A stretch of DNA of 63,110 nt, counting the filler, from Salisapilia sapeloensis CBS 127946 (lineage: Eukaryota; Protista; Oomycota), in the NCBI GenBank assembly GCA_023334545.1. It is 13 parts of 13 records of this genome, joined end to end, with 100 filler letters (N's around TTAATTAATTAA, not from the genome) between each part and the next. Parts side by side here need not be neighbours in the genome. Positions count along the whole stretch, not along the records: positions 42,194 to 45,145 come from JAADVB010000809.1; 12 more parts are not named here. The stretch is one strand, 5' to 3'. Within the stretch, counting starts at the first letter, position 1. Each line of letters starts with the position of its first letter. This document shows positions 42,194 through 43,134 of the stretch, piece by piece. The translations under genes were made by a program, and so were the position numbers. The notes beneath the pieces are model-generated. The model had not been told where the DNA came from, did not search any database, and was given only the letters and a program-made list of their open reading frames with translations.

Positions 42194-43134
42194 CCAAACG
42201 AGAGTTGAAATTTATCAAATTTGCAGATCACGTGAACATCTTACGTCGTCTGGATGATGGTGCAGCGGAAGAGGACCTGGCACTTGAGTTTGGAGTGACC
42301 ACCGATACGATAAAAGAATTCAACAGAGAGCGGTCCGAAATCAAACGCCGGATTGCGTGCGGAGAACGCCGGATTGATATCGAAGAAGAATTTAAAATTG
42401 CAAGCTCTCTCGTATATGTACTGGATCAGCATATCCAAGTCGGGGATACACGTCGGAAGGAGGTCAAAAATGGCTGGTATTGTGATAAAGAAGCGAATGC
42501 CAGCTCCCCCGCGGCCAGCATAAATTTACAGCATGGGATGGTCGAATTGGAATCGGGATCTGCTCGTCTCTTATTGGCAACTCTCCAGAAAGAAGATACG
42601 GACATATTCGAGTTACAAAGATCCAGTGAGCGTCTAATGGAGATGGCAATTGAGGAAGCCTACGCTATGGCCATTTTAAGCAAGCCCTGTGAGAACAATA
42701 ATGCGTTGTCGCTCTGTGCAGTCTCCATGGAGGAGTATGTCGGTAGCCGTGCAATGTTAGACAGTTTCGAGCGAGTCGACGCTGACAGCGCTACAGGAAC
42801 TTTTACGAACGAAGGCATTCAACTTCCTGTCGAAAACCTGGGTCGCCACAAGGTTTTCTTACTCATGGAGTTCGCACAGTACGCAGACAAGCTTCAAGTT
42901 GCCGTAGCACACCTGCTGGACCGTGCTGCCAGGGAAGGAAACGTCGTAATCGTTGCGCTATTTGCTCTTCCTGAAGCGATTCGCTTCGTCCACAACAGAT
43001 ACCCCCTTGTACGCGTCGTTGCATGTCACTTTGTCCGTCCAAACTTGGAGGAGAAAAGTGAATGGTTTTCCCTGTCAAAGGTGGTAATGGTATTAAAGCG
43101 CTTGCGAAGTGTATATGCAGGCACGACGTCGTAG
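42194..43134 (+). CDS. CENP-B/Psq-like HTH fused to a degenerate uracil phosphoribosyltransferase fold (5' end in gap)
   Basis: The frame is open from the contig start (KRELKFIKFADHVNILRRLDDGAAEEDLALEFGVTTDTIKEF, an HTH pattern). The C-terminal ~200 aa align by eye with eukaryotic UPRT (LQKEDT..SSERLMEMAIEEA; LCAVS; LP..L.RHKVFLL; PEAIRFVHNRYPLVRVV). Confidence 0.75.

What the first reader, a model, noticed from the sequence alone, without database searches (positions are those of the whole stretch)
42194..43134. HTH fused to a catalytically degenerate UPRTase fold: candidate eukaryotic PurR/PyrR-like nucleotide-sensing regulator
Seen: one intronless ORF starts with a CENP-B/Psq-type HTH (KRELK..ILRRLDDGAAEEDLALEFGVTTDTIKEF) and continues into ~200 aa that track eukaryotic UPRT block by block. 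The PRPP-binding loop (LLDPMLATGGS in yeast Fur1) reads LLMEFAQYADK, and the C-terminal uracil-binding PGLGDFGDRY segment is missing. No DDE transposase domain follows the HTH. Established: bacteria reuse PRTase folds as ligand sensors (B. subtilis PurR = wHTH + PRT domain; PyrR). Inference: a transposon-type HTH was captured and joined to a dead UPRT domain to make a DNA-binding protein that might respond to pyrimidine nucleotides. I know of no characterised oomycete system like this.
Basis: partly seen in the sequence, partly recalled or inferred. Interest (0 to 1): 0.78.

Follow-up and report, generated by a model that had tools for sequence, protein, structure and literature searches.

The report
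Divergent oomycete HTH plus dead-UPRT protein
The gene is real and joins a small DNA-binding helix-turn-helix to an inactive copy of the enzyme uracil phosphoribosyltransferase, but it belongs to a family found across oomycetes whose DNA binding was already measured in Phytophthora infestans, and this copy is an unusually diverged, 5'-truncated member.

Summary
Window 42196-43134 (+) is a 312-codon open frame that runs off the piece's 5' edge. It encodes a psq/CENP-B-type HTH, a disordered linker and a UPRT-fold domain. The structural model matches solved UPRTs at Z 18-21, against about 11-12 for other PRTs. The catalytic motifs are gone.

It is not an orphan. The same collinear architecture occurs in Phytophthora, Pythium, Globisporangium, Lagenidium, Plasmopara, Bremia, Peronospora, Peronosclerospora, Albugo and Nothophytophthora, with several paralogues per genome. 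One member, PITG_12840, was assayed as a "CENPB" transcription factor and binds GTTAAC(A) (PMC11267843). That paper does not mention the UPRT-like half.

The window copy is the family's outlier:
- Its end branch is 4.29, against a median of 0.23.
- Its HTH keeps only 11 of 26 highly conserved positions and has net charge 0, against +3 to +10 in the family.
- Its PRPP loop holds bulky Gln-Tyr where relatives keep small Ser/Thr-Gly.

A PurR-like nucleotide sensor is therefore poorly supported for this copy. It stays open for the subfamily that retains the uracil-hood motif PGFGDFxxRY. I read this gene as a new, divergent member of a catalogued but mechanistically unstudied family.

The parts
42196..43134 (+). 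Open reading frame of 312 codons plus the stop codon (43132-43134). It is 5'-truncated by the edge of the piece. It encodes the HTH, the linker and the UPRT-like protein.
   Evidence: It is the only long frame, and the chance of no stop is about 1e-8. It aligns end to end (residues 5-309) with Phytophthora relatives.
42220..42357 (+). psq/CENP-B_N-type helix-turn-helix (residues 9-54, four helices). The scaffold residues are kept. Most of the family's conserved basic residues are replaced.
   Evidence: Model helices 9-20, 25-32, 36-44 and 46-54 at pLDDT about 90 or more. Family HTH profile against 2elh gives E 9.5e-4. Foldseek top hit is 2elh (probability 0.97), and 1hlv scores 0.93. Only 11 of 26 conserved columns are kept, and net charge is 0 against a family range of 3-10.
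42364..42513 (+). Variable linker (residues 57-106), predicted disordered. It contains an imperfect 21-nt tandem duplication at 42344-42385.
   Evidence: pLDDT is below 50 for residues 57-106. The linker varies in length and sequence across relatives. The repeat is family D1.
42514..43131 (+). UPRT-fold pseudoenzyme domain (residues 107-312).
   Evidence: VIA gives Z 18-21 to solved UPRTs (7rh8, 1upu, 1jls, 1v9s), rmsd 3.0-4.0 A over 177-194 residues. Other PRTs and PyrR score Z 11-12. Foldseek E is 1e-10. 15 of 19 highly conserved family columns are kept.
42853..42891 (+). Degenerate PRPP-binding loop, VFLLMEFAQYADK (residues 220-232). Canonical UPRT has V-x-L-L-D-P-M-x-A-T-G-G-S here.
   Evidence: Alignment to 7rh8 and 1upf. 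Family columns: Asp in 35 of 74, Ser/Thr then Gly in most, while the window has Met and Gln-Tyr.
43072..43119 (+). C-terminal helix (residues 293-308) that takes the place of the uracil-binding hood. It retains the family-conserved Arg302.
   Evidence: Model helix 293-308. The column profile reads I-P-G-L-G-D-F-x-x-R-Y in one subfamily and L-x-R-L-x-x-V-Y in the other. The VIA alignments run to the C-terminus of the UPRT chains.
43480..45145 (.). Downstream non-coding, repeated DNA. It is not part of the gene.
   Evidence: No stop-free stretch over 96 codons and no significant Pfam hit. No Rfam hit. In DNA run X1 there are two forms, roughly 5-9% apart, and the summed depth is 2-3 times that of the ORF.

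Best explanation
The ORF is the 3' part of a gene for a hyper-divergent member of an oomycete family of nuclear regulators. These proteins join a psq/CENP-B-type HTH to a non-catalytic UPRT-fold domain.

What is shown:
- The architecture, the fold and membership by collinear homology.
- Loss of the catalytic motifs.
- Sequence-specific DNA binding (GTTAAC) by the HTH of a P. infestans member.

What is inferred:
- In the family, the UPRT-like domain serves as an oligomerisation scaffold, because UPRTs are obligate dimers or tetramers. In the subfamily that keeps PGFGDFxxRY it may also serve as a pyrimidine-binding module.
- This copy has lost the family's DNA-contact residues and the phosphate-binding loop. 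It most likely works through protein-protein association, for example heteromers with canonical paralogues, or with a new DNA specificity.
- It is therefore probably not a PurR-like nucleotide-gated DNA binder.
For: Homology and range:
- 36 relatives at E below 1e-3. All of them hit Pfam UPRTase, and many hit HTH models.
- Every named hit is an oomycete protein.
- The ESM Atlas nearest cluster is 'HTH psq-type domain-containing protein', UPRTase 100% and CENP-B_N 62%, Oomycota.
- BLASTP aligns residues 5-309 collinearly with P. nicotianae proteins.

Fold: model pLDDT 82; UPRTs at Z 18-21; HTH nearest to 2elh and 1hlv.

Loss of catalysis, seen:
- The Arg of the V-R-A-G motif is absent.
- The Q-R-D-E loop is absent.
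- The D-P..T-G-G-S loop is degenerate.
- The hood is remodelled.

DNA binding in the family: PITG_12840 is P0107, with UPRTase + CENP-B_N. It contains the exact fragment used in the array, which gave GTTAAC(A) 8-mers.

The gene is maintained:
- 312 stop-free codons, chance about 1e-8, despite an end branch of 4.29.
- 15 of 19 conserved UPRT-like columns are kept.
- Two runs guessed to be RNA hold identical contigs over 42906-43133 only, and none over the higher-copy downstream DNA.

Outlier status: 11 of 26 HTH columns kept; charge 0 against 3-10; recognition helix 0 against +3 or +4 in 73 of 74.
Against: - The 5' end is missing, so upstream basic regions or other domains are unknown.
- Oligomerisation was not modelled or measured.
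- The RNA label of runs X2 and X3 is a guess. Their depth is only 2.6, and they cover just the last ~230 nt of the ORF.
- Tree placement is unresolved. No supported clade holds the window row, so subfamily assignment rests on the C-terminal helix motif alone.
- Loss of conserved HTH residues and the very long branch are also what a decaying copy would show.
- A neutral HTH could still bind DNA with help from flanking segments.
Confidence: 0.6

Rival explanations
1. One reading: a DNA-binding regulator whose dead UPRT domain senses a pyrimidine nucleotide or PRPP and gates DNA binding, by analogy with PurR and PyrR.
For: The architecture is an HTH followed by a PRT fold. A relative's HTH binds DNA. 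Many relatives keep Asp and Ser/Thr-Gly in the PRPP loop, and one subfamily keeps the uracil hood PGFGDFxxRY. Ligand sensing is therefore plausible for the family.
Against: In this copy the loop reads M-E-F-A-Q-Y-A-D-K, with no Asp and no small-residue phosphate cradle. The hood is replaced by a helix. The HTH has net charge 0, and R12, R13, K24, Q25, K30 and R36 of the family are replaced.
Confidence: 0.15
2. A decaying or functionless paralogue: a recently inactivated gene copy, sitting next to repeated DNA, that still happens to be open.
For: The end branch is 4.29 against a median of 0.23. Near-invariant HTH residues are lost. The gene lies at the end of a short contig flanked by two-copy diverged DNA. 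No close relative was found in protein or metagenome collections.
Against: That much divergence under neutrality would have introduced stops, and the chance of 312 open codons is about 1e-8. The hydrophobic core and 15 of 19 conserved UPRT-like columns are kept. The model is confident in both domains. There are possible transcript contigs.
Confidence: 0.2
3. An active uracil phosphoribosyltransferase with an N-terminal extension, as some database names for relatives ('Uracil phosphoribosyltransferase') imply.
For: The fold is specifically UPRT. Automatic names are given.
Against: The Pfam score is below the cut-off. All PRPP, pyrophosphate and uracil-binding motifs are lost in this copy, and the Arg motifs are lost family-wide.
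Confidence: 0.02

Closest known systems
Phytophthora infestans PITG_12840 and PITG_12841 ('CENPB' transcription factors, PMC11267843)
   Same: The domain order is the same: variable N-terminus, psq/CENP-B-type HTH, linker, UPRTase-like domain. PITG_12840 carries Pfam PF04218 + PF14681. The HTH aligns with the window's at 28% identity, E 2e-7.
   Different: Their HTH is the conserved basic form and binds GTTAAC(A). The window's HTH has lost most conserved basic residues. They keep PGFGDFVSRY at the C-terminus and C-S-T-G in the PRPP loop, and the window keeps neither. The UPRT-like halves barely align pairwise.
Catalytic UPRT (T. gondii 1bd3/1upu/1jls, C. albicans Fur1 7rh8; Pfam PF14681)
   Same: The whole fold matches, N-terminal helices through C-terminus, at Z 20-21. 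The conserved R-L-x-x-x-x-x-E-E-A helix and the Cys that aligns with the C in T. gondii's K-I-C-G-V-S stretch are kept.
   Different: The window lacks the Arg of V-R-A-G, the Q-R-D-E flexible loop, D-P-x-x-A-T-G-G-S and P-G-L-G-D-F-G-D-R-Y. It has an N-terminal HTH. It scores below the Pfam cut-off.
Bacillus subtilis PurR (my own knowledge, not tested here)
   Same: An N-terminal DNA-binding domain is joined to a non-catalytic type I PRT fold.
   Different: PurR has a winged-helix domain and a purine-PRT-like domain that still binds PRPP as effector. Here the HTH is psq-type, the fold is UPRT-type, the PRPP loop is destroyed, and the origin is eukaryotic and independent.
PyrR (B. subtilis 1a3c/1a4x/4p86)
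   Same: A PRT fold reused for regulation of pyrimidine genes. It matches structurally at Z 11-12.
   Different: PyrR binds RNA, has no HTH, keeps the PRPP motif and UPRT activity, and matches far less well than true UPRTs.
psq/CENP-B N-terminal HTH (fly Dan 2elh, human CENP-B 1hlv) and pogo/Tigger transposases
   Same: A three- to four-helix homeodomain-like HTH. These are the best sequence and fold matches.
   Different: There is no second HTH (Tc5) and no DDE domain. The matches are weak for so short a domain.

Membership tests
Oomycete psq-HTH + UPRTase-like family (includes PITG_12840) | Collinear architecture: HTH, variable linker, UPRT-fold domain, C-terminal R-containing segment | tested here: met
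   BLASTP aligns residues 5-309 to 136-452 of a 459-aa P. nicotianae member. See also the alignment A1 and the model.
Oomycete psq-HTH + UPRTase-like family (includes PITG_12840) | Significant sequence homology to members | tested here: met
   phmmer against 1.84 billion representatives gave 36 hits at E below 1e-3, best 1.6e-12. The word-index search found none.
Oomycete psq-HTH + UPRTase-like family (includes PITG_12840) | Near-invariant HTH signature (R-Y-L-R-E-x-D-R-R ... G-E-K-Q ... V-S/T-R-A-A-I-C) with a strongly basic recognition helix | tested here: not met
   Only 11 of 26 columns that are at least 80% conserved are kept, against a median of 26. Net charge is 0 against 3-10.
Oomycete psq-HTH + UPRTase-like family (includes PITG_12840) | Sequence-specific binding to GTTAAC-type sites | not testable with these tools
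   This is shown only for PITG_12840 and PITG_12841.
Catalytic UPRT (PF14681, EC 2.4.2.9) | UPRT fold | tested here: met
   Z 18-21, well above other PRTs at 11-12.
Catalytic UPRT (PF14681, EC 2.4.2.9) | Pfam gathering score | tested here: not met
   20 bits against a cut-off of 27.
Catalytic UPRT (PF14681, EC 2.4.2.9) | PRPP loop D-P-x-x-A-T-G-G-S, Arg of V-R-A-G, flexible-loop R-D, and uracil hood P-G-L-G-D-F/A-G-D-R | tested here: not met
   Alignments to 7rh8, 1upf and 1bd3, and the column tables.
PurR-type regulator (HTH + effector-binding PRT domain) | DNA-binding domain N-terminal to a non-catalytic PRT fold | tested here: met
   This is an architectural analogy only. The HTH class differs.
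PurR-type regulator (HTH + effector-binding PRT domain) | Intact PRPP or phosphate-binding loop for the effector | tested here: not met
   The loop reads M-E-F-A-Q-Y-A-D-K.
PurR-type regulator (HTH + effector-binding PRT domain) | Ligand-modulated DNA binding | not testable with these tools
   This needs biochemistry.
pogo/Tigger-type transposase | CENP-B_N HTH followed by a Tc5 HTH and a DDE catalytic domain | tested here: not met
   The ORF has only UPRTase and a weak CENP-B_N hit. Nothing was found downstream.

The most novel reading that the evidence does not exclude
The family is an independently evolved eukaryotic counterpart of PurR. In members like PITG_12840, a retained uracil hood (PGFGDFxxRY) would let a pyrimidine gate a GTTAAC-binding HTH dimer. 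The window's copy, with a charge-neutral HTH and a plugged phosphate loop, would be a derived non-DNA-binding subunit that heteromerises through the UPRT dimer interface and modulates its DNA-binding paralogues.
Probability: 0.15. Interest if true: 0.75.

Novelty: new member of a known kind. Interest (0 to 1): 0.45.

Why it matters
Oomycetes include major crop and animal pathogens, and their transcription factors are poorly understood. This family puts a metabolic-enzyme fold behind a DNA-binding domain in a eukaryote, an arrangement best known from bacterial PurR. One subfamily still carries the uracil-binding motif, so pyrimidine-responsive transcription is a concrete and testable idea. The only study found that touches the family treated it simply as 'CENPB' HTH factors.

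The window's copy adds one point: the fold can be kept while both the DNA-contact and the ligand-contact residues are replaced. As a single, truncated and highly diverged member it is a weaker entry point than PITG_12840-type genes.

Tried and rejected
- The word-index protein search with the window protein found nothing. The exhaustive search was needed.
- The metagenome locus search failed twice. The alignment was too diverse, and the single protein gave 77 pattern matches with none confirmed. So no close orthologue was available for dN/dS.
- Rfam found nothing in the piece.
- Pfam on eight downstream or antisense ORFs gave only chance-level hits.
- The maximum-likelihood tree could not place the window row. 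It has a long branch and no supported clade, so I make no claim about its subfamily from the tree.
- Literature searches for the UPRT-like half found nothing. The terms covered UPRTase, CENP-B, pseudoenzyme, PITG ids and oomycete domain fusions.
- The active-UPRT and transposase readings are rejected on motif and domain grounds.
- The organism is coded in the run table, so I do not name a species.
- The runs guessed to be RNA give only contigs, so neither strand nor transcript ends could be read.

Full report
**What is in the sequence**

The piece spans 42194-45145. Its only long open frame is 42196-43134 on the + strand. It has 312 codons before the stop at 43132-43134. No other frame exceeds 120 codons, and the chance of 312 stop-free codons at this composition is about 1e-8.

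The frame is open to the very first base of the piece. It has no ATG before residue 114, so the gene is cut by the piece's edge. A 1469-nt DNA contig of run X1 continues 114 nt further upstream.

GC content is 58%, 37% and 50% at codon positions 1, 2 and 3. The downstream 2 kb is 44.5% GC.

**Is the HTH plus UPRT reading real?**

The window protein alone gives only weak signals:
- Pfam UPRTase E 5e-4, 20 bits against a 27-bit cut-off, covering profile positions 121-181.
- Pfam CENP-B_N E 0.13.
- phmmer against solved structures finds only UPRTs, at E 0.04-0.3.
- The word-index search of 5.8 billion proteins found nothing.

The ESM Atlas feature search pointed to a 52-member Oomycota cluster named 'HTH psq-type domain-containing protein'. 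In that cluster UPRTase is present in 100% of members and CENP-B_N in 62%.

The exhaustive phmmer search then gave 36 representatives at E below 1e-3, with the best at 1.6e-12 and 24-37% identity. Several are matched in one stretch from the HTH to the end of the UPRT-like domain. All 37 aligned sequences hit Pfam UPRTase (best 2.6e-35). Fifteen hit HTH_23 and ten hit CENP-B_N. BLASTP aligns window residues 5-309 collinearly with residues 136-452 of a 459-aa P. nicotianae protein.

**Fold**

With the family alignment, AlphaFold2 gives mean pLDDT 82 and pTM 0.67. Both the HTH (residues about 9-54) and residues 111-312 are above 90. The linker, residues 57-106, is disordered.

Foldseek's first 27 matches are all UPRTs, down to E 1.4e-10. 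VIA-align gives Z 18.4-21.4 for UPRTs (7rh8, 1jls, 1upu, 1v9s and others). The rmsd is 3.0-4.0 A over 177-194 residues. The alignments span model residues 107-311 and nearly the whole target chains. OPRT, APRT and PyrR follow at Z 11-12. The C-terminal half is therefore specifically a UPRT fold.

The family's HTH profile finds the psq/CENP-B_N domain of Drosophila Dan (2elh) as its best solved relative, at E 9.5e-4. The HTH folded alone (pLDDT 80) has 2elh as its top Foldseek match (probability 0.97). CENP-B 1hlv scores 0.93 at rmsd 1.4 A over 43 residues. E-values are not significant for so short a domain.

**Catalytic state**

The family profile aligns to T. gondii UPRT at 3e-34. Four differences stand out:
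- Where UPRT has C-G-V-S-I-V-R-A-G, the family has C-A-I-S-M-E-x-x-G. The Arg is gone.
- The R-I-G Arg is mostly Pro.
- The Q-R-D-E flexible loop is variable.
- The PRPP loop V-x-L-L-D-P-M-x-A-T-G-G-S has become V-F-L-L-D-x-V-x-x-S-G-x.

In the PRPP loop, Asp is kept in 35 of 74 members, and Ser or Thr followed by Gly is kept in most. No member is therefore expected to be catalytic. This is an inference from motif loss, and the roles assigned to the motifs come from my knowledge of type I PRTs.

The window copy goes further. Its loop is V-F-L-L-M-E-F-A-Q-Y-A-D-K, with Met for Asp and Gln-Tyr where small residues cradle the 5'-phosphate.

**The C-terminus splits the family**

The subfamily that holds PITG_12840 ends in I-V/I-P-G-F-G-D-F-V-S-R-Y, close to the canonical uracil hood P-G-L-G-D-F-G-D-R-Y. 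The other subfamily ends in a helix, L-x-R-L-x-x-V-Y. The window has V-L-K-R-L-R-S-V-Y, which is the second type, with the family-conserved Arg302 kept (64 of 74). The hood is remodelled rather than simply missing.

**Range and prior knowledge**

Every named relative is an oomycete protein. The genera are Phytophthora (many species), Pythium, Globisporangium, Lagenidium, Plasmopara, Bremia, Peronospora, Peronosclerospora, Albugo and Nothophytophthora. There are several paralogues per genome.

In P. ramorum two family genes lie head to head. The automatic names are 'HTH psq-type domain-containing protein', 'Phosphoribosyltransferase domain-containing protein' and 'Uracil phosphoribosyltransferase'.

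The P. infestans transcription-factor survey PMC11267843 classed PITG_12840 and PITG_12841 as CENPB factors. It expressed fragments that contain the family's HTH and the first helix of the UPRT-like domain. Its protein-binding arrays gave GTTAAC(A) 8-mers for both. The authors note that the motifs are palindromic and not enriched at centromeres.

P0107 is PITG_12840. It is 542 aa, carries PF14681 + PF04218, and contains those exact fragments. The paper never mentions phosphoribosyltransferase. I found no paper that discusses the UPRT-like half.

The fusion is therefore catalogued, and its HTH is partly characterised. The role of the pseudoenzyme half is unstudied in the literature I could search.

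**How this copy differs from the rest of the family**

In a 75-row maximum-likelihood tree the window row has an end branch of 4.29 changes per column, against a median of 0.23. It joins no supported clade.

The divergence is uneven between the two halves:
- The UPRT-like half keeps 15 of the 19 columns that are at least 80% conserved. It keeps 31 of the 52 columns that are at least 60% conserved, which is within the range of other divergent members.
- The HTH keeps only 11 of 26, against a family median of 26.

The HTH replacements include R12H, R13V, E23A, K24A, Q25E, K30L, R36T, A37D, A38T and C40K. Net charge of the HTH is 0 in the window, against 3 to 10 (median 7) in 71 relatives. The recognition helix has charge 0, against +3 or +4 in 73 of 74.

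This HTH is almost invariant from Albugo to Phytophthora and across paralogous subfamilies. The change therefore looks like a shift in constraint, not just phylogenetic distance (inference).

**Is the gene alive?**

Evidence for a live gene:
- The frame is open despite the very long branch.
- The core residues are conserved.
- The model is confident in both domains.
- Two runs guessed to be RNA hold identical contigs of about 180 nt over 42906-43133. They hold nothing over the higher-copy downstream DNA.

Evidence against:
- The RNA label is a guess, and the depth is 2.6.
- The 5' end is unknown.
- The gene abuts repeated DNA.
- No close orthologue exists in any collection searched, so dN/dS could not be computed.

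**Mechanism**

Three things are shown: an HTH plus a UPRT-fold pseudoenzyme, membership in an oomycete family, and sequence-specific DNA binding by one member's HTH.

The rest is inferred. In the family, the UPRT-like domain most likely provides oligomerisation. UPRTs are dimers or tetramers, and a palindromic site fits a dimer. In the PGFGDF subfamily it may also bind a pyrimidine.

This copy lacks both the basic DNA-contact residues and the phosphate cradle. It more likely acts through protein-protein contacts, or with a new DNA specificity, than as a nucleotide-gated DNA binder. My confidence is about 0.6.

The rivals are:
- A decaying copy: 0.2.
- An active UPRT: 0.02.

**Comparison with known systems and verdict**

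The protein resembles bacterial PurR in architecture only. The HTH class and PRT subtype differ, the effector loop is destroyed, and the origin is independent. It is not a catalytic UPRT and not a transposase.

It is a new, strongly diverged member of a catalogued family. Interest is moderate. The family-level question, a possible pyrimidine-responsive eukaryotic transcription factor, is the more valuable lead, and it is better pursued in PITG_12840-type genes.

Noticed in passing
window 43480-45145: The 1.7 kb downstream of the gene has no ORF over 96 codons. In DNA run X1 it occurs in two forms, roughly 5-9% apart, with summed depth 2-3 times that of the ORF contig. It is probably repeated DNA that broke the assembly.
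   Followed up: partly
window 43313-43348: A 36-nt stretch is shared with other contigs of both X1 (DNA) and X3 (guessed RNA). Those contigs run on into unrelated sequence on both sides, so this is a small dispersed element or motif.
   Followed up: no
window 42344-42385: An imperfect 21-nt tandem duplication (76% identity) lies inside the ORF at the start of the disordered linker. It encodes the repeated R-R-I motif.
   Followed up: no
L001 3790-7167 (-) and 8001-9842 (+): In P. ramorum two family genes lie head to head. One gene model also carries Cpn60_TCP1, which probably reflects two genes merged into one model. The numbering of PITG_12840 and PITG_12841, and of G. ultimum K3WQP8, K3WQQ8, K3WQR0 and K3WQR3, suggests similar clustering.
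   Followed up: partly
relatives P0107, P0083, P0080, P0067, P0064 (C-termini): The subfamily that includes PITG_12840 keeps a near-canonical uracil-hood motif (P-G-F/L/I-G-D/N-F-x-x-R-Y) and C-S-T-G in the PRPP loop, although it has lost the loop Asp. The other subfamily replaced the hood by an L-x-R-L-x-x-V-Y helix.
   Followed up: partly
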